Shown piece by piece: positions 1 to 53,757 of a stretch of 64,000 nt of DNA. Position 1 is the first letter of the stretch. Each line of letters opens with the position of its first letter. This DNA is from Octopus sinensis (lineage: Eukaryota), in assembly GCF_006345805.1 (NCBI RefSeq), contig NC_042999.1:131812001-131876000 (forward strand), in the 5' to 3' direction. A program made the translations under genes and the position numbers. The notes beneath the pieces are model-generated. The model was not told the origin of the DNA, searched no databases, and was given only the letters and a program-made list of their open reading frames with translations.

Positions 1-242
1 CAAGAATACACATTAAGAAAGGTTAAGAAAAAATATCCTAAAACTCAATGAGCTTTTAGATAGATTATCTCTCTTTTGACTTCTGGAAAATCTTTTGCCC
101 AGATATTTATTTACTGATATTGTCAAAATTCTATTTCAATTGTTTTCAACTCATCAAATTGAGCCAAATCAAAATTTTAAACAAGCACTAATGGAAAGTA
201 TTCAGTGTTGATTTCAAATAAACAACTAAGATATATGTAATA

Positions 243-264
243 GATATAACCAATAATAATAATA

Positions 265-358
<94 letters not shown>
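243..358. repeat. (TAA)n / (TA)n compound microsatellite
   Basis: Directly visible simple repeats; they produce the spurious ORF 188..379. Confidence 0.95.
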
Positions 359-359
<1 letters not shown>

Positions 360-804
360 TTTAAAATCATTGTAATCATTGATGATGGATTCTAAGATTT
401 ACTTCATAGTACATGCAATAAAAATAGATACCCATAAGCTGACACTAGTTATATATATTACAGAATAATAAGACCTAAAACTTCCTTGTTAAAAACATAT
501 TGCAAATATGTAAACCTTAGAATGACGATTGTAATTTACAAATTTGACTGTAAAATTTAAAGTTGCAAATTTCATAATTCCAACAGTTGCATTAGGTAAA
601 CAAGTACAGCATTCTTTTATAAACTTACATACTTCTAAAACAAGGAGAAATTATGACACACTACACCACACACCATAAAACTAAACTAGATAGGCAAACA
701 AACAAAATATTTCCATACTTTATAGAATTCTTCACAGAAATAGAAGTCTAACTATGAAAGCAACATTAATATTGCAACACAAGGCTACAGTTAACATACA
801 GCAC

Positions 805-1517
805 CAGTGGTGGCTTGTAGATAAAATTAGTGTAGATGCTGCTTCAGAAAATTTTTAGCTGTTGTTTTAATATTGTGTAATATTGTGTAAGTAAACAAAC
901 ATATAAAAAGAAAATCTATACATAAACTTGATCGGTTTGCGTTTTAGCCACTGCCAGGTATTGTGTTTAATTCGTTTACTGAACACTGATGTGAATTCCC
1001 CCTTGTTTTCCAAAAATCCCACCTAAATCACAAAATAAGTGGGGCAAATGTGCCCTATTTTTCAAATCCTGGCAGCAACACTGAAGCTGGAAGTAGGATA
1101 ATAATCTAATCCTACACTTTATCACATTTAAGAATATAAACAGGCTTTTAAGTACAACACACATGGAGTCAAAAAGAAACACTACCTTTCATCAGAATAC
1201 AAGAGTCGGTACTACCGTTCATGCAGTGCTCTCTCTCTCCCTTGTGTGAAGCTTCCTATCTCGAATATGTGAGCATACGCACAACAGCCAAACACCATGT
1301 TGCTGGAACTGTGAAGCGCACAGTTCTGTACCAGGAATTTTGTATTTTTCCTCATAAACTAAGGGATGGTAACTGACATTAAGCTTAAGGATTATATAAT
1401 GTACAAGAATATAGAAATAATTAAAGAAAAAAGAACTCATATTGAATGTTATCGATAATATCGAGTGGAAATAGGGGGTGCTGCAGTTCTACAGTGCCTA
1501 TACATGAGCTGCCACTG
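805..1517. mobile_element. Non-autonomous DNA transposon, hAT-like termini
   Basis: Imperfect terminal inverted repeats CAGTGGTGGCTTGT (805) and ATGAGCTGCCACTG (ends 1517); differences are consistent with CpG decay of CAGTGGCGGCTCGT. No clean TSD found. Confidence 0.45.
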
Positions 1518-2004
1518 ATACAAATATGGTCAAGTTCTAGCAAGAAAATCTCTACAGATATAAGGAGCCCACTATAAAAAGGAAAGCAAAAACCTCTTCA
1601 CATCCTGAAGATGAGACTGAGATAACTTGGAAATTAATAAAGAGCAATTTGGAAGCTTTATTGTGCAGTATGAAACATAAGAATCTGATACATATATACG
1701 AGAAAACCTTAATAAAAAGATTAAATTGGAGGGAAAAGCTGTTCCCCATATATTTCAGGCATACACACACATGTTGATATATATGTATGTATGTATGTGT
1801 GTGTGTGTATATATATATATATTATATATATACATACGATGGGCTTCTTTCAGTTTCCATTTACCAAATCCACTCACAAGATTTTAATTGGCCTGAGGCT
1901 ATAGTAGAAGACTTGCCCAAGATACCATGCAATGGAACTGAACCCAGAACCATGTGGTTGGGAAGCAAGCTTCTTAGCACACAACCACACCTGCTTCTAT
2001 ATAT

Positions 2005-2040
<36 letters not shown>

Positions 2041-2430
2041 GGAATGGTGAACCTCAATGCAAATAAGGCTATGAATAATAGCATGTAAATATATTGGGTT
2101 AAAAACTCTTTGGATAGAAAAATTTGAAGGCTGTCCATGGGACACAAACCCATATTTCCTGTAAACATAACAGATGTTCTGCCATTGGACCAAAGCAATC
2201 CTTTGAATTCCTCCATTTTAGAAATTCTATTCTTACCTGTGAGATTTGTATGTTGTTGACATCATAAGAAATCAGAAACTTTGAGAAAACACAAAATAAT
2301 TTTTTGTAGAAACAGTGAATCTTAAAGCATATAAAACTATAAATAATTGGGCTAAAATCATTTTTTGGATAGAAAATATCAAAGGCTGACATAAAAAAAA
2401 ATATGTGTATATATTAAAGATATATATTCT

Positions 2431-2465
<35 letters not shown>

Positions 2466-3044
2466 TGTTATCTATGCTTGCATGGGTTGCATTAAACTAC
2501 ATTGGAGCAAAGTTTCTATGGCCAGATGCTCTTCCTGATGCCAACCCTCACCTGTCTCCAAAAAAGGTAGCAATCTATCAAACAATGAACTACCTGGATT
2601 TGGTTTTATGGTGAGCTGCAAGCAATGGAACAACAAGGTTATCATTTACAGTCAGCAAACAAAATTGAAGATGAAGGGAAACACAAACTCTCTCTCTCTC
2701 TCACACACACACATATACATGCACACACACTGCTATAGACTTCTTCACCTTTTGTTTCCCAGTTTCACTTCCAAGGCATTCATGCAATGGGACCAAGTCC
2801 CCTGACCGTATGGTTCAGAGATGAACTTCTTAATCACACTCCCATGCCTGCACCTGGATGATGGGGTCTGATGTTGAAACCCCATGAAACCCCCTAGAGC
2901 ATCCACAAGATGTATTTTAAAATTATGTATATTATTTTCTGTTTTTAAACATAACATTTGTATTCAGTTTCTCCTTAATACAAAATAAAATTACTTAATT
3001 CAGAACATTTCAAATACTTTTTTTTTTCATCTATTTTTGAACAG

Positions 3045-3647
3045 GTTTACCCTACCGAAATAGTGCAAGGTTACTGAAAACAAATGGTGCTTATCCAACA
3101 GAATATGTGTCTGATAACGAACCAAATCAACCTGTATTGAGAAACTTTTCACACAGATTACCTGACGACAAAGTGCAAAGGCCTACAAGAAGCTATCCAT
3201 ATGAAAATGCTGCTCTTTCTGGATACAATAATGAACTTACTAGGTCACTTCAAAGATCAAACATATCTAAGTCATTCTCAGTAAAATCTGGTTCTTCAAA
3301 ATCTTCTCTTAAAAATAAAGGCAGTAGTCGAACAGGTTCTCTATTGTCACGGAAATCTCAGAATAACAGTCCGCGGTTAGCCAAATCAACCACGAGCACA
3401 GTAATTAGTGAACACAACAGCTCTGAACTATTGTTTCCACCTTCTCACTCTGGCCTGGACAACAGTAATAATGATCTCAGCATACATGCCAAGGTCAATC
3501 CATTACTAGATCTTGAGTTTGATGCTGAATGTTCTGTATCAAATCCTGATCAAACAGATAATGTTGAAATTTATGCCCAGGAAAAATCAGTAGATGAACA
3601 GAGTTGCATTGAAAGCATAAGTGATGTGACAGAATCAGAAACAAAAG
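3045..3647 (+). CDS. Internal 603-nt coding exon of an unidentified gene (Ser/Lys/Asn-rich, probably disordered)
   Basis: Acceptor tttttgaacag|GT at 3045; open frame (G)LPYRNSARLLKTNG...SDVTESETK, covering ORF 3107..3688; phase 1-1 if the donor AAAG|GCAAGT at 3648 is used. No family recognised. Confidence 0.75.
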
Positions 3648-4835
3648 GCAAGTTGGTGATTTATTACAATTTATCAGTTTTCTTTTAATATTTTAAAGGC
3701 AATGACTTGGTAGAATCATTAGCATGCCAGGCAAAATGCTTTGCAGCATTTCATCCAGCTGTATGTTCTGAGTTCAAATTCTGCTGAGGTCAACTTCACC
3801 TTTCATCCTTCCAGGGTTGATAAAATAAATACCAGTTGAGTATTGGAGTTGATGTAATCAACTTACCCACTCCCCAGAAATTGCTGGCCTTGTGCCAACA
3901 TTTGAAATCAATATTTTAAAGGCAACGAGCTGGAAGAATCGTTATCACTCCGGGAAAAATACTTAGCAGCGTTTCAACTGTCTCATTGTTCTGAGTTCAA
4001 ATTCTACTGAGGTTGACTTTGCCTTTCATTCTTTTGGATCCATAAAATAAGAGCCAGTTGAGCATTGGGGTTGATGTAAAAATATTGTGCCAAAATTTGA
4101 AACCAATATTTCAAAGGCAGTGTGCTGGCAGAATCAAAGTTACTGCAGGGGATGTTGTGTATAATGTAAGGGCAGCAGTGGAGGAAGTGCTTAACCCTTT
4201 AGCCTTCTGATTACTCTGTCAAATGTAATGCTTATTTAATTATTTAAATTAATCATGCATTATCTCATAGCTTTGGGTTGGTGTCAGCAGTTAGATCTGG
4301 TCACTTTGAACATAAAATAGGGAAAATATTTTGGTCAGATATGGCCAGTTCAAATGCTAAAGTGTTAAGAAGTCATGGGTGTTTGAGAGTAAGTAATAAA
4401 CTGTGAGTTGTACAGAAAAATGATTTGTATAATAGTTCAGTACACACTAAAATTTGTACTTTTTCTTGGACCACTGACAAATTTATTAGCAGATCAGAAC
4501 TCTTAGTTTAGTAATAAATGTTGTTAGTTCAAATTTAGTGTGGTGCTACAAACACATCCATAAATAAATGACCCAATGATGATTGCAGAGATCAAACCGA
4601 TCAGAATGTTGTGTAGATATGATTATTGGCAATCTTTCAAGTCTAAAGAATAGTCAGAAAAATTCAAATTATATTAACAAGTCAACTCAGACATTTAAAC
4701 ATTTCACAAAATGTCACTAATATTTCTATACGTCATCACACAATTTCTCTGCCAGTTTCTAGCATGGTACTTAAATCAAAAATCAATATTTTTATCAGTT
4801 CTAATTCAATAATTAAATATTTGATTGTATTGCAG

Positions 4836-4919
4836 GTCAAAAAGTAACCACACAAGCATTTGAGTTTCTTGACAGTTACTTATCTGATGATGATGCAGAT
4901 AAACAGAAAGATACTATAA
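4836..4919 (+). CDS. 84-nt internal exon, copy A (GQKVTTQAFEFLDSYLSDDDADKQKDTI)
   Basis: Acceptor attgtattgcag|, donor |gtgagt, phase 1-1 and in frame with the 3045-3647 exon; paralogous to 6408-6491. Confidence 0.8.
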
Positions 4920-6407
4920 GTGAGTTGTTTTTAATATATCCAGAGTTTAAGACAGAATCATCTTTTATGTCTTGAGTTCAAATCTCATCGAAGACCAACT
5001 TTGTTTTTCATTTCTGTTGAGTGAATAAAATAAGTACCAATCATTTCCTGCTGATATTTGTTCCTTTAGATTAAACATTTAGGCTGTGTGGTAAGAAGCT
5101 TATTTCCCAATGACATAGTTCTGGGTTCAGTCTCACTGCATGAGCAAATGTCTTCTACTATAGCCTCCAGCCGACTGAAGCCTTGTGAGTGAATTTAGTA
5201 GAGGGAAACTGAAAGTAGGCCATCATTCATGTGTGTGTCTTTGTGTCTGTGTTTGTCACCCACCACCACTTGATAACCGGTGTTGATGTGTTTACATCCC
5301 TGTAACTTAGCAGTTTGGCAAAAGACACCAAAAGAATAAATGCTAGGCTTAAAAATATCTAGTCCTAGGGTCAATTTGTTCAACTAAAACTTCAACGTGG
5401 TGTCCCAGCATGGCTGCAGTCAAATTACTGAAACAAGTAAAAATATATGTATGTATATATTAGCATATTTACTTTAATACTATTACTTTCTGAATTCAAA
5501 TTTTGTTAAGTTCGATTTTCATCTTCCTGGGACAGGTAAAACATGTTCTAACATATATACTTCTTAGGTATGAAATCAAAGAATAGGTCATTCAACTTGC
5601 TAGAAACAACCAAATTTCTCTCAACCTACACTTTACCATCTGAAAAAGGGAAAGGCACATTGGAGAATGTAATCTCAGACACACTCAAATAAAGAGATGC
5701 TCTTGGTTGGAAAGTTTCTGATCATAGGTCTGTTCCACTAGGGTTGGACTGCACAGTAACAACTTCACATTCCTCACATAACTAAAGCTCATATCTTCAT
5801 GCAACTAACACTGAGCACAATTCCTGGGGAAAGTGGCCCATCCCTGCTAAGTGGTATTTATCCATCATTGCATTGCAATATATACAAGACTAGAATGCAG
5901 TGAGCTGGCAGAATCATTGCTGTGCTGGGCAAAATGCTTAGTGGCATTTCATCCATCTTTATGTTCTGAGTTCAAATTCCACCAAGGTAAATTTTGCCTT
6001 TCATCCTGTCAGAGTTGATAAAATAAATACCAATTTAGTACTGGGGGTTGATGTAATAAACTTACTCTCAGCCCTGGAACTGCTGGCCTTGTGCAAGACT
6101 ACAATACCATTATGCATCTGACAGCCTGCAAGCTACTTGCTTCCTAAATTGCAGCAGAGCCTTCTGATCCCTGACCCAGAGTGTCTCTATCAACTTAACA
6201 GAATCCTGAACTAAGATAATTCTATAAATAGTAGTCTTGCTGAAGAAGTCTCCTGTTTCAACTTCAGCTATATATTGCTCTCTCTCAACAAAACTCCTCA
6301 CAAACTCTTATTCTCTTTTCCCTGAGTTATACCATTACATTACACACAGCTGCTACATGTGAGAATGTCTTTCATCACAACATTTCAAACATCTCATTGT
6401 ATTGCAG

Positions 6408-6491
6408 GTCAGAATGTAACCACACAAGCTTTTGAGTTTCTAGATAATTATTTATCTGATGACGAAGTAGAAAAACAGAAGGATAATACAT
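6408..6491 (+). CDS. 84-nt internal exon, copy B (GQNVTTQAFEFLDNYLSDDEVEKQKDNT)
   Basis: Acceptor attgtattgcag|, donor |gtaagt, phase 1-1; 69/84 nt and 21/28 aa identical to copy A by hand count. Confidence 0.8.
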
Positions 6492-7311
6492 GTAAGTTTT
6501 TTTGTAATATATCTTTGTTTTTGCAAAACACATACAAATTCCCCCACTACATATATATGCTTCTGTGTGTGTGTGTGCGTGCGCGCGTGCGCAAGTATGT
6601 TCGTACGTACACAAATATGTGTGTGTGTCTGGTAAAAAGATGACTTGACATGCTACATATGTTTCAATAGCATGGTAATTTATTCATGATTTGTGCATTA
6701 TGTAATCTGAAATCACCTGCCATCTTAGCAGGCATCTGAACTGTCAGTAGAATAAAAACTTCTTCACCACATGACATAAGTGACTAATGTTACTGCTGAG
6801 ATTGAAGTTGCAGAATACCCAATATCATTCAACAATTGATCTTAATTTTGAGATTGGATGATAAAATGGAAATATTAAATTAGTAACTTATTAGTATTCC
6901 AGTAGTGTGAGCTGCTTCCCAATTACATGATTGAAGCTTCCAAGCTAATAACCATTATCAACTGGATCCCCACCAACTGATAAATATATATATATATATA
7001 TATATATATTTGGAAAAAGAAAAAGAGTAACTTCACTGGTAGTTTAATTTATTATTTTATATGTTTATAAATGTATACATACACATGCAAACACATATAT
7101 ACAAACTCATGTGCATATGTTCTTTTTTATGTGTATGTTATTGCTTTAATTGCAATCTACAAACTAAAATGTAAAATTTATATTATTAAAAAAAATTTTT
7201 AATAAAAAATTAAACTGATTAGAACTACCAATGAAGTCTTTTTTCAAATATAACTGTACCAAGGGTCTCACACAATTTCGAATATATATATGTGTGTGTG
7301 TTCACATACAC

Positions 7312-7376
<65 letters not shown>

Positions 7377-7395
7377 TTATATATATATATATATA

Positions 7396-8424
7396 TCTTT
7401 ATATATATAAAACTGAGAATGTGTGTGTGTCTGTCTGTCTGTGTGTTTCCCTAAAACTTGAGAACTACACAACCAATTTCATTCAAATTTTACACATGCC
7501 TTACTTAGGGTCCATGTAGTTTCATGGGCAAAAAAAATGTTCAACTTCTTGCCTAGAGCGAGCCCATAGCAATATCATATCTTCTCCACTATTTCAGTAT
7601 TACGTGTTAAAAGTGAAACAAAAACATTTCTTTATTTTATGTCAGATACTTTCACTTTAACAATAAAAATAATAATTACAATTGAATTATATGTAGTAAG
7701 TAATAATTAAAATCAAACTAAAGTATAATATAATCGTAACATAACAAAAGTAAAAGTAACAATTGGTATAAAATTGCATCAATGACTTGAACTTGAATAA
7801 GTGGTTTCCCATGAATGGGAATAAATTAAAAATAAAATTAGCGTGCAGAAATGAAATAGTCCAGATGGATAATAAAAAATTAAATTAAAGAAAAGACTAT
7901 TGTCTATAAAGTATACAATGTAGAGAAAAACGAAGATTTGAACACATGGAGGAAAGCACCTTCGAAAAGTGTCATGATGTGACTATGAAAGATATCTAAC
8001 CAGAGGCGGTAAATTCGCCACAATAGAAGCAAGGTTCGAGTCAACGGAGCGTGCAAGGGAGTACTCGACTCAAACTTGCAAAGTGGAAATATTTTACCTT
8101 TATATCTGGGACATAGGACGTCCCGGAAAAAAATTTTTAATGCCCTCCCCCCGAAGTAGAGGTAGGCTGGATTGTAGCCACACTTCTATAGAAGAGGGAG
8201 GACAAGATACAATTGATCGAAATTACAAGAGACGGACTAACAATTCTAGTCTGTTATATATTTTGAGTATTGTTATCACTAGCAATATCAAGATATAACT
8301 TTGTATTTTGTATTTTATGTGTAGATGTATATATATAGATGTACATGTAATATGTACACATATATATATACATATATACATGCACTAGCACTATGACCTG
8401 GCAACGACGGGTCTTTAATGCTAG
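7396..8424 (+). mobile_element. Non-autonomous Helitron-type element
   Basis: Starts A|TC-tttatatatataaaa...gtgtgtgtctgtctgt; ends with hairpin GACCTG-gcaacga-CGGGTC (8395-8413) followed by CTAG|T (8421-8424). The 5' part is repeated at about 18537-18820. Confidence 0.6.
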
Positions 8425-8451
8425 TATATATATATATATATATATATACAC

Positions 8452-9676
8452 ACAAGATAAGAAAATGGAGAAATACATCTAAATCAAATATCAATTACCA
8501 GACAATACTCAATCACATACTTTATTAGACCACCACATAAGAGACTGTAGGGTTAAATATAAAAAGCAGAACAAATCAGTGTACATAAAGGAATGTACAT
8601 AAAAAAGTGTACATAAAAGAGTAAGTTGTATAATAAGTAGAATATATATAAAAGAGAATATAAATATAAGTGTAGGTTACATCTTACAGCTGTTTCGACC
8701 ATGTAGATAAGTATGTCTCATTTACCAATATTAGCCCTTTATGGTTGGTCAATATATAGATATAAATGAGACATTTACAAAAATATCATAAGGCCTCTTC
8801 GGAGATTATGTAATATAACTCAGTCTACATATATACCCACATGGGTGTGGGTGCATACCCACAATACAACATATACATATGAGTGCATATACTCACACTC
8901 TTATACATATAAAAATATATATACATTTACATAATGATATAAATAAATAATATAAATTAGTAAACATATATATGTGTTCCACATTCAATGTCTCAGTTTT
9001 TCGACTTAATATTGTGATAATAAACATACACAAATTAGTACCTAGATGCAAATATACATAGTCAATAGTACATTATATTACTTCATAATAATTTCTAAAG
9101 TGTCATTAAAGTTAGCATCATTATCGTTGTCAATACCGAACACATATATATGTTTACTAATTTATATTATTTATTTATATCATTATGTAAATGTATATAT
9201 ATTTTTATATGTATAAGAGTGTGAGTATATGCACTCATATGTATATGTATATGTTGTATTGTGGGTATGCACCCACACCCATGTGGGTATATATGTAGAC
9301 TGAGTTATATTACATAATCTCCGAAGAGGCCTTATGATATTTTTGTAAATGTCTCATTTATATCTATATATTGACCAACCATAAAGGGCTAATATTGGTA
9401 AAATGAGACATACTTATCTACATGGCCGAAACAGCTGTAAGATGTAACCTATACTTATATTTATATTTACTTATATTTATATTCTCTTTTATATATATTC
9501 TACTTATTATACAACATTACTCTTTTATGTACATTCCTTTATGTACACTGATTTGTTCTGCTTTTTTATGTTTAACCCTACAGTCTCTTATGTGGTGGTT
9601 TAATAAAGTATGTGATTGAGTATTATCTGATAATTGATATTTGATTTAGATGTATTTCTCCATTTTCTTATCTTGT
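8452..9676. mobile_element. Long inverted repeat (arms 8452-8979 and 9138-9676, 158-bp spacer) with a hammerhead-like motif in each arm; probable Penelope-like element remnant
   Basis: Arms are near-identical reverse complements. Motif ATCT-CCGAAGA-GGCC...GGCC-GAAA-CAGCTG-TA-AGAT at 9317-9443 (+), mirrored at 8681-8806 (-). The inverted repeat is certain; the PLE assignment is inference. Confidence 0.7.
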
Positions 9677-9847
9677 ATTAGTAATTTGTGGTAAATCCTT
9701 TTACATTTGCCCATATGATACAGTAATTGAATTGATTGCATCGCAATCATTAACATTTATGTATTAACTTTGTTGGGTACTTCACTAGCAGTATATTGGA
9801 TATATGTTATCCCATGGAGGGTTGCAATTACAACCCCTATCTTAATT

Positions 9848-9885
<38 letters not shown>

Positions 9886-12569
9886 GACTTACAGTTTCCA
9901 GCCACCATTTCCATTCACAAAGCATTGGTTGGTCCAAGAACAATGTAGAAAATCACTTAAAACACTTGCTCACAGTGTCAAGAAACAGGATAGAACCTGA
10001 GACCACATGATAACAAAATGAACTTTGTATCCACTCAGCTATGCCTGTAGTTAAATAATTTATTAAGAGGAATGCAAAAATCTTGCACTTTTCCTACCAG
10101 TTTTAGTGTAAGTGTGTGTGTGTGTGTGTGTGTCTGTCTGTCTGTCTGTCTGTTGATAAGTGTGTCAAGCAAGAAAACAAGCATTTGAAAGTTATTTCAT
10201 GTGTTGGGCAGTTATTTTCATTATGTTTTCTGAAAATTATAATTATTTGAAATAATAATATTAGCTGTGCTTCAGTATTGTACCCATAAAAAGATTGATA
10301 AATTCATTTCTATCAATAATTATTGATTATTTATTTGAACTCTTTCTAAAATTCTGATTGATAACCATTTGTTTGTTTGTTTGTTTGTTTAATTAGATGA
10401 ATCACCAAGATAATAGTACCAGCTACTGAGACAATTCACTTTCATCTTGATTTGGTATCAAGCCAAAGTCCAGGAATTGGCTGAGTTACCCATAGTCACT
10501 CGAACCTGTATTGTTGCAGTTCAATGCAGAATGTGATCATTGAATTATTTTAAATTTTTCTGTCTGCTTCATATGACATTGGACGCAGTGTAAAGATTAT
10601 AATTTCACAACCCGGTTTGATGGTGACTTGTCTGAACAATACATTGGTTGATTATAATATTGGCCTTACATACACAACAGGAAGATATCATTACACATCA
10701 CATACTGAAATAACATTTGAAGCGTGAAACATTTTGAACATTTTTACATTGCAAACATGTCATTATACTGTATATATACATATATATATATGATTTAATA
10801 AAATAAATTTGTCATCTGTGTATATAGATGTGTGTATGTGTGTGTGAGAGAGAGAGCAAGTTATTAAATAATCTTACATTCCAATGTGTCACTACACTGT
10901 ATATAAAGAATGACTTATCAAACAGAAATTCTTTATATATGTGTATGTGTATGAATATATGTATGTATATATGTTTATAAATGTATACATACATGCACAA
11001 ACACATATATAAAAACTATGTGCATGTGTGTTTTTTTTTTACATCTGTGTTATTGCTTTAATTGCAATCTTTGAACTTGTGTTGCTGTTCTTGGAAACTT
11101 TTGTTTACAATGTTTGTCTCTGTAATCAAACTAAGCAAATCAATATATATAACTCTTAATATTTCTCTCTCTGGAGAATATTCTTGGTAAATACTTCTTT
11201 TTTACTTTGAACAATTCCAACTCTTCAGCTCTTTGGAAGCTTAATATTTTTTTCCCAATGTGTTTGAGACATAAGCAAAAATATTATACATATTTATATT
11301 AATATTTACTAAATATATCTATAATATTCCATTGGGTTGTTGAAATAACAGCAACAGTGCATGATAATACATTAACTGTATATTTGGAAATATAGAACTA
11401 GCTTTATAGGAATAACCGACAAGGTTTACAATAAATAGCTGATAATTCAGTAAACTGCTGCAGAAAATGACAGTTATTAATTCCTCAAAGTATCAAAATC
11501 TCATAAGTCTTTTTCCCCCTTCAGTAAAATCCTGGAACTGCTGTAAAAGAAAACACAGATGACATTTTGCATATTGCTAATGTTATCTTTCAATCTTTTT
11601 TTTTCTTTATTATTTAGTAGATTAAAAAAATATGTAACCCTTTTGATACCAACCTGCCAAAAACTGCCCTTATTTCTATGGTACAAACTTCCTGTTTTGA
11701 CTGTTTTGAAATGATCTAAATTTAAACCTTCCATCAAAATTTCATGTTCATTTATATTCCAGACACCAGCTTAATTATGATAAAGTTAGTTTACTAAATT
11801 CTTCCATTGGTTTCAAAATCAATTGAAATAAAGGTAGAGTATTTGAACGGAAATATTGGAACAAAGGGGTTAAAATATTAAGCTCTTTCCCATATTATTT
11901 TGTATCCTGCCATTTATTGTTAGAGAAATCAAATGAAGACTTCAGGGCTTCCATAATATCCATCATATTGCTGATATAAACCACATCAAAAGTGATCTGG
12001 TGAAGTATATTGACAAATGAAACTGCTATCCTTTACCAGAATGATGAGTAATAATGCACATAACAACTCATTTCTGTATCTTGTATTTGAATGACTGTCA
12101 AATAAATCAGTATTTTGTGTGAAAACCTGCTCACTATCAAATCATTTAGTGCTGTTGGAAGGAGTTATGATTACTATTATTATGACTTCCAAATATAGGG
12201 AGTAGTTAAATCACTTGCTCTCTTTAAACTTTAAACTAACTGTTGCCATGTAAAACTGTTGAAAAATGTAATTTACTTCAGTTCAACCTTAATGAGGGCG
12301 TTAAAATTGCTCAAACATTTTTGTAACTCAAGATTTTCATAAAATGTCTGTATGACCAAAACAAAAAGAATTAAAAAAATTTACAGAAATGTTTGTTTTT
12401 GGAGTTATTTTTGCATTTCATTTCTATTGTTCTATTTTAAATAATGTCATCTGAAAATTCTGTATTATGTTAAATACAACTTTAATTTTTGGGGGGTTTT
12501 TCTTTGAAACTTCTTGATTCTAGGTTTTATTTCTAAATTTGGAAGTTCCTTTCTTTTATGTTTGACCAA

Positions 12570-29681: not shown

Positions 29682-53757
<24,076 letters not shown>

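What the first reader, a model, noticed from the sequence alone, without database searches (positions are those of the whole stretch)
4836..6491. Tandemly duplicated 84-nt exons under apparent purifying selection (repeat module or mutually exclusive pair)
Seen: two symmetric phase 1-1 exons 1.5 kb apart, with 15 differences in 84 nt (7 synonymous, 7 non-synonymous, 1 in the split codon). The core VTTQAFEFLD.YLSDD has five synonymous changes and one replacement. Splice flanks are also homologous (attgtattgcag; gt[g/a]agtt.ttt.taatatatc). Inference: a short aromatic/acidic linear motif in an otherwise disordered protein was duplicated and both copies kept, either included together to double a binding motif or spliced alternatively. 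I cannot name the gene.
Basis: partly seen in the sequence, partly recalled or inferred. Interest (0 to 1): 0.7.

Follow-up and report, generated by a model that had tools for sequence, protein, structure and literature searches.

The report
Duplicated motif exon in octopus gene
An octopus gene for an uncharacterised membrane protein carries two tandem copies of the 84-base exon encoding its most conserved C-terminal motif; both copies have been kept under selection and all gene models include both, which makes this a real but fairly ordinary exon duplication.

Summary
Window 4836-4919 and 6408-6491 are two 84-nt phase 1-1 exons with 15 differences (7 synonymous, 7 replacement, 1 in the split codon). 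Only one reading frame is open in both.

The window is Octopus sinensis chromosome CM016861.1. The gene is LOC115209825, an uncharacterised 426-aa single-pass membrane protein with a disordered tail. The annotated protein contains both exons in tandem and ends exactly as I derived from the window.

The exon encodes the most conserved block of a mollusc-wide orphan family, G-K-x-V-T-x-x-A-F-x-F-L-D-x-Y-L-S-D-D-E. A, F, F, L and Y are invariant in 31 proteins. Gastropods, bivalves, cuttlefish and squid-like transcripts have one copy. The Sepia pharaonis genomic locus has one 90-nt phase 1-1 exon. Only O. sinensis/vulgaris, O. bimaculoides and Argonauta hians have two.

dN/dS is 0.05-0.16 for every pair of copies, so both are constrained.

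All gene models include both exons, and no skipped isoform exists in the protein collection. None of the three checked mechanisms that force mutual exclusion applies. Best reading: a constitutive two-copy docking motif. No transcript reads were available, so alternative splicing is not excluded. The binding partner is unknown.

The parts
3045..3647 (+). Coding exon 4 of LOC115209825 (603 nt, phase 1-1), encoding the disordered cytoplasmic tail. Coding exons 1-3, which include the membrane helix, lie upstream of the window.
   Evidence: The acceptor is tttgaacag|GT at 3044/3045 and the frame is open to 3647. The translation is identical to P0040 residues 163-366. It is homologous to Argonauta L001 15528-16107.
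3648..3653 (+). GC-type 5' splice site (AAG|GCAAGT) of the intron between exon 4 and exon A
   Evidence: The same GC donor is present in O. bimaculoides. Argonauta has GTAAGT at the same position.
4815..4835 (+). Upstream intronic flank of exon A that is still homologous to the flank of exon B (ends ..attgtattgcag)
4836..4919 (+). Exon A (coding exon 5), 84 nt, phase 1-1, first copy of the motif: (G)QKVTTQAFEFLDSYLSDDDADKQKDTI(S)
   Evidence: It is present in P0040, P0047 and P0001. dN/dS against the Argonauta copy A is 0.107, p=9e-4.
4920..4940 (+). Donor gtgagt plus the downstream flank of exon A that is homologous to the flank of exon B
6387..6407 (+). Upstream intronic flank of exon B, homologous to the flank of exon A
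6408..6491 (+). Exon B (coding exon 6), 84 nt, phase 1-1, second copy of the motif: (S)QNVTTQAFEFLDNYLSDDEVEKQKDNT(Y)
   Evidence: It is present in P0040, P0047 and P0001. dN/dS against the Argonauta copy B is 0.082, p=1.6e-4.
6492..6513 (+). Donor gtaagt plus the downstream flank of exon B that is homologous to the flank of exon A
10397..10413 (+). Coding part of the terminal exon: AT GAA TCA CCA AGA TAA, giving (Y)ESPR and the stop codon. The 3'UTR follows.
   Evidence: The acceptor is ttaattag|AT. It is homologous to the Argonauta terminal exon GT GAA TTT TCC AGA TAA. The annotated CDS of L012 ends at the base equal to window 10413. P0040 ends ...DNTYESPR.
10741..10983 (+). 3'UTR segment still alignable with the Argonauta locus
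   Evidence: blastn against L001 19342-19453, 76% identity, E=2e-12

Best explanation
The penultimate coding exon of a mollusc-specific single-pass membrane protein (O. sinensis LOC115209825) was duplicated in tandem in the octopod lineage. This exon was already a symmetric phase 1-1 cassette. It encodes the family's invariant C-terminal motif: an amphipathic A-F-x-F-L-x-x-Y-L helix followed by an S-D-D-[DE] acidic stretch that fits the CK2 kinase consensus. Because the exon is 84 nt long with phase 1 at both ends, the copy was in frame at once. Both copies are spliced into the main mRNA, so the cytoplasmic tail ends with two docking motifs 28 residues apart instead of one. Both have been kept by purifying selection. 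Shown here: the duplication, where it occurs among molluscs, the constraint on both copies, and joint inclusion in every gene model. Inferred: that the motif docks a conserved cytosolic partner and that two copies raise valency or avidity. The partner is unknown.
For: The exons and the gene model were read directly from the window and match the annotated 426-aa protein exactly, including the A-B junction codon AGT and the ending YESPR. The first 12 kb of the window (all that was compared) are 100% identical to O. sinensis GCA_006345805.1 CM016861.1. Two copies are present in O. sinensis/vulgaris, O. bimaculoides and Argonauta hians. One copy is present in 30 other mollusc proteins. The 55-kb Sepia pharaonis genomic locus has one copy, a 90-nt phase 1-1 exon followed by a mini terminal exon. 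Lottia has the same phase-1 intron in front of the motif. Across 31 family members the invariant residues are P, V and W of an N-proximal block and A, F, F, L and Y of this motif. dN/dS is 0.05-0.16 for all six pairs of copies, with Fisher p from 0.003 to 1e-5. Synonymous sites are near saturation (pS 0.47-0.67) and the introns are unalignable beyond about 25 nt. Models from RefSeq (O. sinensis, O. bimaculoides), UniProt A0A0L8GFK2, ENA (O. vulgaris, two isoforms) and the DDBJ A. hians annotation all contain both exons. Ten hypothetical isoforms lacking A, B or both are absent from a collection of about 15 billion proteins. Joint inclusion keeps the frame. The A-B intron is 1488, 1127 and 714 nt in the three species, and the introns flanking A and B that were read use GT-AG or GC-AG sites. 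AlphaFold2 predicts only the membrane helix (residues 3-32) and a helix at 386-409 across motif B, where pLDDT rises to 54-74 against about 45 elsewhere.
Against: No spliced reads or transcript contigs from any octopod could be examined. The only octopod Logan contigs hold unspliced exon 4. The gene models are not fully independent of each other: the A. hians annotation used Octopus proteins as homology evidence. Quartet site patterns do not resolve one-to-one orthology of the copies, with 5 sites for orthology, 6 for grouping by species and 2 for the cross pattern. A single ancestral duplication is therefore the parsimonious reading and is not proven. The GC donor in front of exon A belongs to a class that I recall, from memory, as enriched among alternatively spliced introns. 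The structural support for a helix is of modest confidence. No partner, solved structure or known motif class could be matched.
Confidence: 0.7

Rival explanations
1. Regulated alternative splicing. A and B would be used as mutually exclusive or cassette exons, giving isoforms with one motif variant (S/N at motif position 13, DDDA or DDEV after it) or with one versus two motifs. The annotated two-exon form would be only one of several.
For: The pair meets the sequence criteria used to nominate mutually exclusive exons: neighbouring exons of the same length, same frame and clear homology. Both exons are symmetric, so skipping either or both keeps the frame and creates no stop codon. The intron in front of A has a GC donor in both Octopus species. 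About 20-25 nt of intron on each side of both exons has stayed similar, which could reflect shared splicing signals.
Against: Every available gene model joins A to B and none of the skipped products is on record. None of the three checked mechanisms that force exclusion applies. The length is divisible by three. The A-B intron is 714-1488 nt, against a steric limit of about 50 nt. There is no sign of a U12-type site. The motif core is nearly identical in A and B, so swapping them would change little. Hatje et al. note that many similar neighbouring exons are not spliced exclusively (PMC5740500).
Confidence: 0.15
2. Octopus and Argonauta acquired the second copy independently, or the copies are being homogenised by gene conversion. 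In either case the pair would be younger, or less independent, than a single old duplication implies.
For: Within-species A-B distances (15 and 13 differences) equal the between-species distances (13, 14, 13, 19). Informative sites split 6 for species grouping, 5 for orthology and 2 for the cross pattern. Both Octopus copies share CAA where both Argonauta copies and one decapod transcript (L002) have CAG; Sepia pharaonis also has CAA, so this site does not polarise the change.
Against: The order, phase, 84-nt length and AGT junction codon are the same in both lineages. The 3' half of the exon and the upstream flank of A favour A-A and B-B pairing. The roughly 15 freely varying sites are near saturation, so a star-like pattern is expected anyway. 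This rival changes the dating but not the conclusion that both copies are constrained.
Confidence: 0.12
3. One copy is a decaying pseudo-exon that annotation pipelines include only because it resembles its neighbour.
For: No read-level evidence was available here. Homology-based annotation can propagate such an exon.
Against: Both copies keep an open frame, intact AG/GT sites and 85% protein identity between Octopus and Argonauta (my count from the peptides printed). The preceding exon keeps about 59%. dN/dS is 0.107 for A and 0.082 for B on the orthologous comparisons, both significant.
Confidence: 0.03

Closest known systems
Tandem exon duplication that creates an internal protein repeat. 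The phenomenon was surveyed by Letunic et al. 2002, as cited in Ivanov and Pervouchine 2022, PMC9013439.
   Same: The exons are adjacent in one gene, of equal length and phase, with significant homology that extends a few bases into the introns. Both are retained in frame. That survey reported tandemly duplicated exons in about 10% of animal genes.
   Different: Here the duplicated unit is not a folded domain or structural repeat. It is a 28-residue segment carrying a short linear motif at the end of a disordered tail, in a family with no described function.
Mutually exclusive exon clusters derived from exon duplication (for example Dscam1, tropomyosin, 14-3-3 zeta; PMC9013439, PMC5740500)
   Same: They share the origin by tandem duplication, the same length and frame, and conserved splice-site flanks.
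   Different: All gene models join the two exons. Joint inclusion is in frame, the intron between them is long, and no enforcing mechanism was found.
Transmembrane adaptor proteins of vertebrate immune cells (LAT, PAG/Cbp, NTAL). This comparison is from memory and concerns architecture only.
   Same: The extracellular end is very short, with one membrane helix and cysteines just after it (FYFCCG). A long disordered cytoplasmic tail follows, studded with conserved Tyr- and NPx[FY]-type short motifs in the wider family.
   Different: There is no sequence homology and no Pfam match. The family is restricted to molluscs at the sensitivity reached. Tyrosine phosphorylation and palmitoylation are untested.
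LC3-interacting regions of ER-phagy receptors (FAM134B DDFELLD, TEX264 FEELD). These sequences are recalled from memory and serve only as a lead.
   Same: The core F-E-F-L-D fits [WFY]-x-x-[LIV] followed by an acidic residue.
   Different: The residue before the aromatic is an invariant Ala, not an acidic or phosphorylatable residue. The family also keeps the second Phe and a Tyr four residues after it invariant (AF.FL..Y), which a LIR does not require. The pattern fits a longer amphipathic helix better.

Membership tests
Tandem exon duplication | Neighbouring exons of one gene with significant sequence homology | tested here: met
   127 nt at 83.5% identity, E=3e-33, and the only such pair in the window
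Tandem exon duplication | Same length and same intron phase, so that both can be translated in frame | tested here: met
   Both are 84 nt and phase 1-1. One shared open frame exists. The same holds in O. bimaculoides and Argonauta.
Tandem exon duplication | A single-copy state in outgroups | tested here: met
   One copy in the Sepia pharaonis genomic locus and in 30 other mollusc proteins
Mutually exclusive exon cluster | Homologous neighbouring exons of similar length in the same frame (the candidate criteria of PMC5740500) | tested here: met
Mutually exclusive exon cluster | The exons are never joined in mature transcripts | tested here: not met
   This was tested at the level of gene models only. 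All models in four species join A to B, and skipped isoforms are absent from the protein collection. Read-level data could not be examined with these tools.
Mutually exclusive exon cluster | A mechanism that enforces exclusion (frame incompatibility, steric hindrance with an intron under about 50 nt, U2/U12 incompatibility) | tested here: not met
   84 is divisible by 3. The A-B intron is 714-1488 nt. The splice sites are GT-AG or GC-AG. Competing RNA structures were not tested.
LIR/AIM (Atg8-family binding motif) | Core [WFY]-x-x-[LIV] | tested here: met
   F-E-F-L is present in both copies
LIR/AIM (Atg8-family binding motif) | Acidic or phosphorylatable residues directly N-terminal of the aromatic, and a conservation pattern explained by the four-residue core | tested here: inconclusive
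   Position -1 is an invariant Ala. The second Phe and a downstream Tyr are also invariant. The definition of the motif is from memory.
FFAT motif (VAP binding, EFFDAxE) | Conserved Asp at position 4 and a small residue at position 5, with an acidic tract upstream | tested here: not met
   The corresponding position varies among D, E, N and K across the family, and the acidic tract lies downstream, not upstream. The definition of the motif is from memory.
Any curated protein family (Pfam-A) | A match above the gathering score | tested here: not met
   Twelve family members gave only sub-threshold hits to membrane-helix models
Mollusc-wide orphan family of LOC115209825 | N-terminal membrane helix, the LPKV..GLW and YHSQ blocks, a phase-1 intron before a C-terminal AF.FL..Y[LIM][SD]D motif | tested here: met
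   Profile searches gave E from 1e-16 to 1e-159 for gastropod and bivalve proteins. The exon plan is shared with Lottia.

The most novel reading that the evidence does not exclude
The AF.FL..YLSDD[DE] block would be a so far undescribed docking motif of a mollusc-specific membrane adaptor. Octopods would tune its valency, either constitutively (two motifs) or by tissue-specific skipping of A or B, which are both symmetric exons. That would make it a lineage-specific regulatory change in a membrane adaptor protein of unknown tissue expression.
Probability: 0.2. Interest if true: 0.5.

Novelty: new member of a known kind. Interest (0 to 1): 0.3.

Why it matters
The finding gives a clean, datable example of a short linear motif being doubled by duplication of a symmetric exon, with both copies then held by selection. 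It also points to an unstudied protein family conserved across molluscs. The duplicated segment is the family's most conserved part, so it marks the place to start when looking for the family's function and binding partner. It does not change any general picture: tandem exon duplication is common, and both exons are already in the public gene models.

Tried and rejected
- **Short-tail protein search.** A word-index search with only the 81-aa tail returned nothing and did not even recover the Argonauta protein. This is a limit of the tool and carries no evidence.
- **Family and structure databases.** Pfam gave only sub-threshold membrane-helix hits. A profile of the motif against PDB sequences gave nothing below E=0.4; the hits were buried helices of GST and a methyltransferase.
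- **Literature.** A full-text search for six gene and protein identifiers found no paper.
- **Read-through idea.** I suspected that the Argonauta ending SEFSR was read-through of the exon B donor. I rejected this because a real terminal exon lies 1 kb downstream. The apparently contiguous Sepia tail was also a coincidence of reading through the donor: the transcript maps to a terminal exon 7.9 kb away.
- **Known motif classes.** I rejected FFAT and the AP-4 YX[FYL][FL]E motif because the positions they require vary in the family. LIR was left as a lead only.
- **Orthology of the copies.** Quartet analysis of A and B between Octopus and Argonauta was unresolved at 5:6:2 informative sites.
- **Extra copies and RNA genes.** There is no third or degenerate copy in any of the four genomic loci. 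The window has no tRNA and no Rfam match.
- **Not attempted.** I did not run a fold search, because the model is disordered. I did not date the Octopus-Argonauta split, because the papers I read gave no figure.

Full report
**Observation.** Window 4836-4919 and 6408-6491 are each preceded by ...attgtattgcag. They are followed by gtgagt and gtaagt respectively. Each is 84 nt, and they differ at 15 positions. Of the three forward frames only the one at offset 2 is open in both. It gives QKVTTQAFEFLDSYLSDDDADKQKDTI and QNVTTQAFEFLDNYLSDDEVEKQKDNT. The homologous stretch is 127 nt long (4815-4940 against 6387-6513) at 83.5% identity, E=3e-33 in the window. It is the only such pair there. Beyond about 20-25 nt on either side, the two units share nothing except copies of an interspersed repeat.

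**The gene.** The open frame of the upstream exon (3045-3647) ends one base into a codon at a GC donor, AAG|GCAAGT. This fits the phase of exon A. A protein search with that exon plus both copies found an Argonauta hians protein, P0001. It is 400 aa, named 'uncharacterized protein LOC115209825', and carries both copies in tandem at its C-terminus.

- A later profile search recovered P0040, the 426-aa product of Octopus sinensis LOC115209825 (XP_029634244-6). It is identical to O. vulgaris CAI9720050.
- Its sequence from residue 163 onward is exactly what the window encodes. This includes the A-B junction codon AGT (Ser) and the ending ...DNTYESPR.
- That ending comes from a terminal mini-exon I had located independently at 10397-10413, by homology to the Argonauta terminal exon.
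- Window 1-12000 is 100% identical to GCA_006345805.1 CM016861.1.
- Coding exons 1-3, which include the membrane helix, lie upstream of the window.

**The family.** A profile of the two cephalopod proteins, searched against 1.84 billion representatives, found 13 proteins. A 12-sequence profile searched through the word index found 27.

- Every hit that carries a source name is from a mollusc and is labelled uncharacterised or hypothetical. The gastropods are Lottia, Patella, Haliotis, Gigantopelta, Littorina, Babylonia, Batillaria, Pomacea, Aplysia, Physella, Bulinus and Plakobranchus. The bivalves are Crassostrea, Ostrea, Saccostrea, Pecten and Argopecten. The cephalopods make up the rest. 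Ten hits are unnamed transcript contigs whose organism I could not check.
- No member has a Pfam domain.
- All share a very short N-terminus, one membrane helix followed by Cys and basic residues, the blocks LPKV..GLW and YHSQ, a long variable tail, and a C-terminal block G-K-x-[IV]-[ST]-x-x-A-F-x-F-L-[DEN]-x-Y-[LIM]-S-D-[DE]-[DE] about 20-33 residues from the end (58 in one member).
- Over 31 sequences the invariant residues are P, V and W of the first block and A, F, F, L and Y of the last. The duplicated exon therefore encodes the best-conserved part of the protein.

**Distribution of the duplication.** Counting AF.FL in 33 proteins gives two copies in O. sinensis/vulgaris, O. bimaculoides and A. 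hians, and one copy everywhere else.

- At the genomic level, O. sinensis, O. bimaculoides and Argonauta each have exactly two copies. They lie in the same order with the same 84-nt length and phase, and the A-B introns are 1488, 1127 and 714 nt.
- The 55-kb Sepia pharaonis locus has one copy. It is a 90-nt phase 1-1 exon, followed after 7.9 kb by a terminal exon encoding (G)KS and the stop codon. I checked this against a transcript contig.
- Lottia has the same five-exon plan and the same phase-1 intron in front of the motif, but there the motif lies in the last exon.
- The order of events follows from this. The coleoid ancestor already had the motif on a symmetric internal exon. In the line leading to Octopus and Argonauta that exon was duplicated, and the product was in frame at once.
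- Whether this happened once is likely but not proven. Informative sites split 5 (A with A, B with B), 6 (by species) and 2 (cross pattern). All pairwise distances are 13-19 differences. This is what near-saturated free sites, or some gene conversion, would produce.

**Selection.** For all six pairs among the four Octopus and Argonauta copies, pS is 0.47-0.67 and pN is 0.06-0.11. dN/dS is 0.05-0.16, and Fisher tests give p from 0.003 to 1e-5. The orthologous comparisons give 0.107 for A and 0.082 for B. Each copy keeps 23 of 27 residues between Octopus and Argonauta, while the preceding exon keeps about 59%.

**Together or alternative.**

- Every model I could retrieve contains both exons. These are three RefSeq transcripts in O. 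sinensis, RefSeq and the older UniProt entry in O. bimaculoides, two O. vulgaris isoforms that differ only at the N-terminus, and the A. hians model.
- I built the ten proteins that skipping A, B or both would give in these species. None exists in a collection of about 15 billion sequences.
- The usual ways of forcing mutual exclusion do not apply. The length is divisible by three, the intervening intron is far above the roughly 50-nt steric limit, and the splice sites are ordinary.
- Hatje et al. also note that many similar neighbouring exons are not spliced exclusively (PMC5740500).
- Against this, the models are partly interdependent, because the A. hians pipeline used Octopus proteins. No octopod transcript contig was available; the only Logan contigs hold unspliced exon 4. 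The intron before A has a GC donor in both Octopus species.
- I put joint inclusion as the main form at about 0.8.

**How it probably works.** AlphaFold2 with the family alignment predicts only the membrane helix (residues 3-32, pLDDT above 90) and a helix at 386-409 across motif B. There pLDDT rises to 54-74, against about 45 elsewhere. On a helical wheel, A, F, F, L, Y and L fall within an arc of about 160 degrees, and E, D and S fall opposite (my arithmetic from the sequence). The nearly invariant S-D-[DE]-[DE] fits the minimal CK2 consensus S-x-x-[DE] (established knowledge). The likely mechanism is a short helix that folds on binding to a conserved cytosolic partner, with an adjacent acidic and possibly phosphorylated stretch. 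In octopods two such sites sit 28 residues apart, which gives bivalent binding. This part is inference. No partner or solved complex could be matched. The known motif classes I considered (FFAT, AP-4, LIR) either fail or do not explain the conservation pattern.

**Verdict.** It is a new example of a well-known kind of event in an unstudied gene. Tandem exon duplication is reported in about 10% of animal genes (PMC9013439), and both exons are already in the public gene models.

Noticed in passing
window 3696-3895, 3919-4082, 5894-6094, partial 4959-5041: Copies of one interspersed SINE-like repeat (66-80% alike) lie in the introns on both sides of exon A. The same family matches many other places in the window and a site just downstream of the Argonauta gene (L001 19179-19306).
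   Followed up: partly
window 8452-9676: A near-perfect palindrome of about 1.2 kb (arms 94-100% complementary, centre near 9060) lies in the last intron. It sits inside a segment of about 2.4 kb (about 7395-9855) that has no counterpart in the O. bimaculoides locus. It may be a foldback element or an assembly artefact.
   Followed up: partly
window 3648-3649: The intron after exon 4 uses a GC donor (AAG|GCAAGT) in O. sinensis and O. bimaculoides. Argonauta has GT at the same site.
   Followed up: yes
window 48519-49472 (+): A 317-aa ORF with a partial reverse-transcriptase domain (PF00078, E=1e-8). It is probably a retrotransposon remnant.
   Followed up: partly
window 40510-40918: A minisatellite with a 30-nt unit, 13.6 copies at 93% identity. 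It is open in several frames, which explains the repetitive ORFs listed there.
   Followed up: partly
proteins P0004-P0046 (the family, not the window): Gastropod and bivalve members carry further conserved short blocks that cephalopods have lost or changed: NPx[FY], ATDSMKL, NKTDD, HYxYxGxIYAVP, and an SPxxSP tail after the motif. This suggests an adaptor-like tail with several docking sites.
   Followed up: no
window 6520-6640 and 6977-7420: Long (GT)n/(GC)n and (TA)n/(CT)n microsatellites begin about 80 nt downstream of the exon B donor (GT/GC tract near 6570-6630). They produce the spurious long ORFs that overlap exon B on both strands.
   Followed up: no
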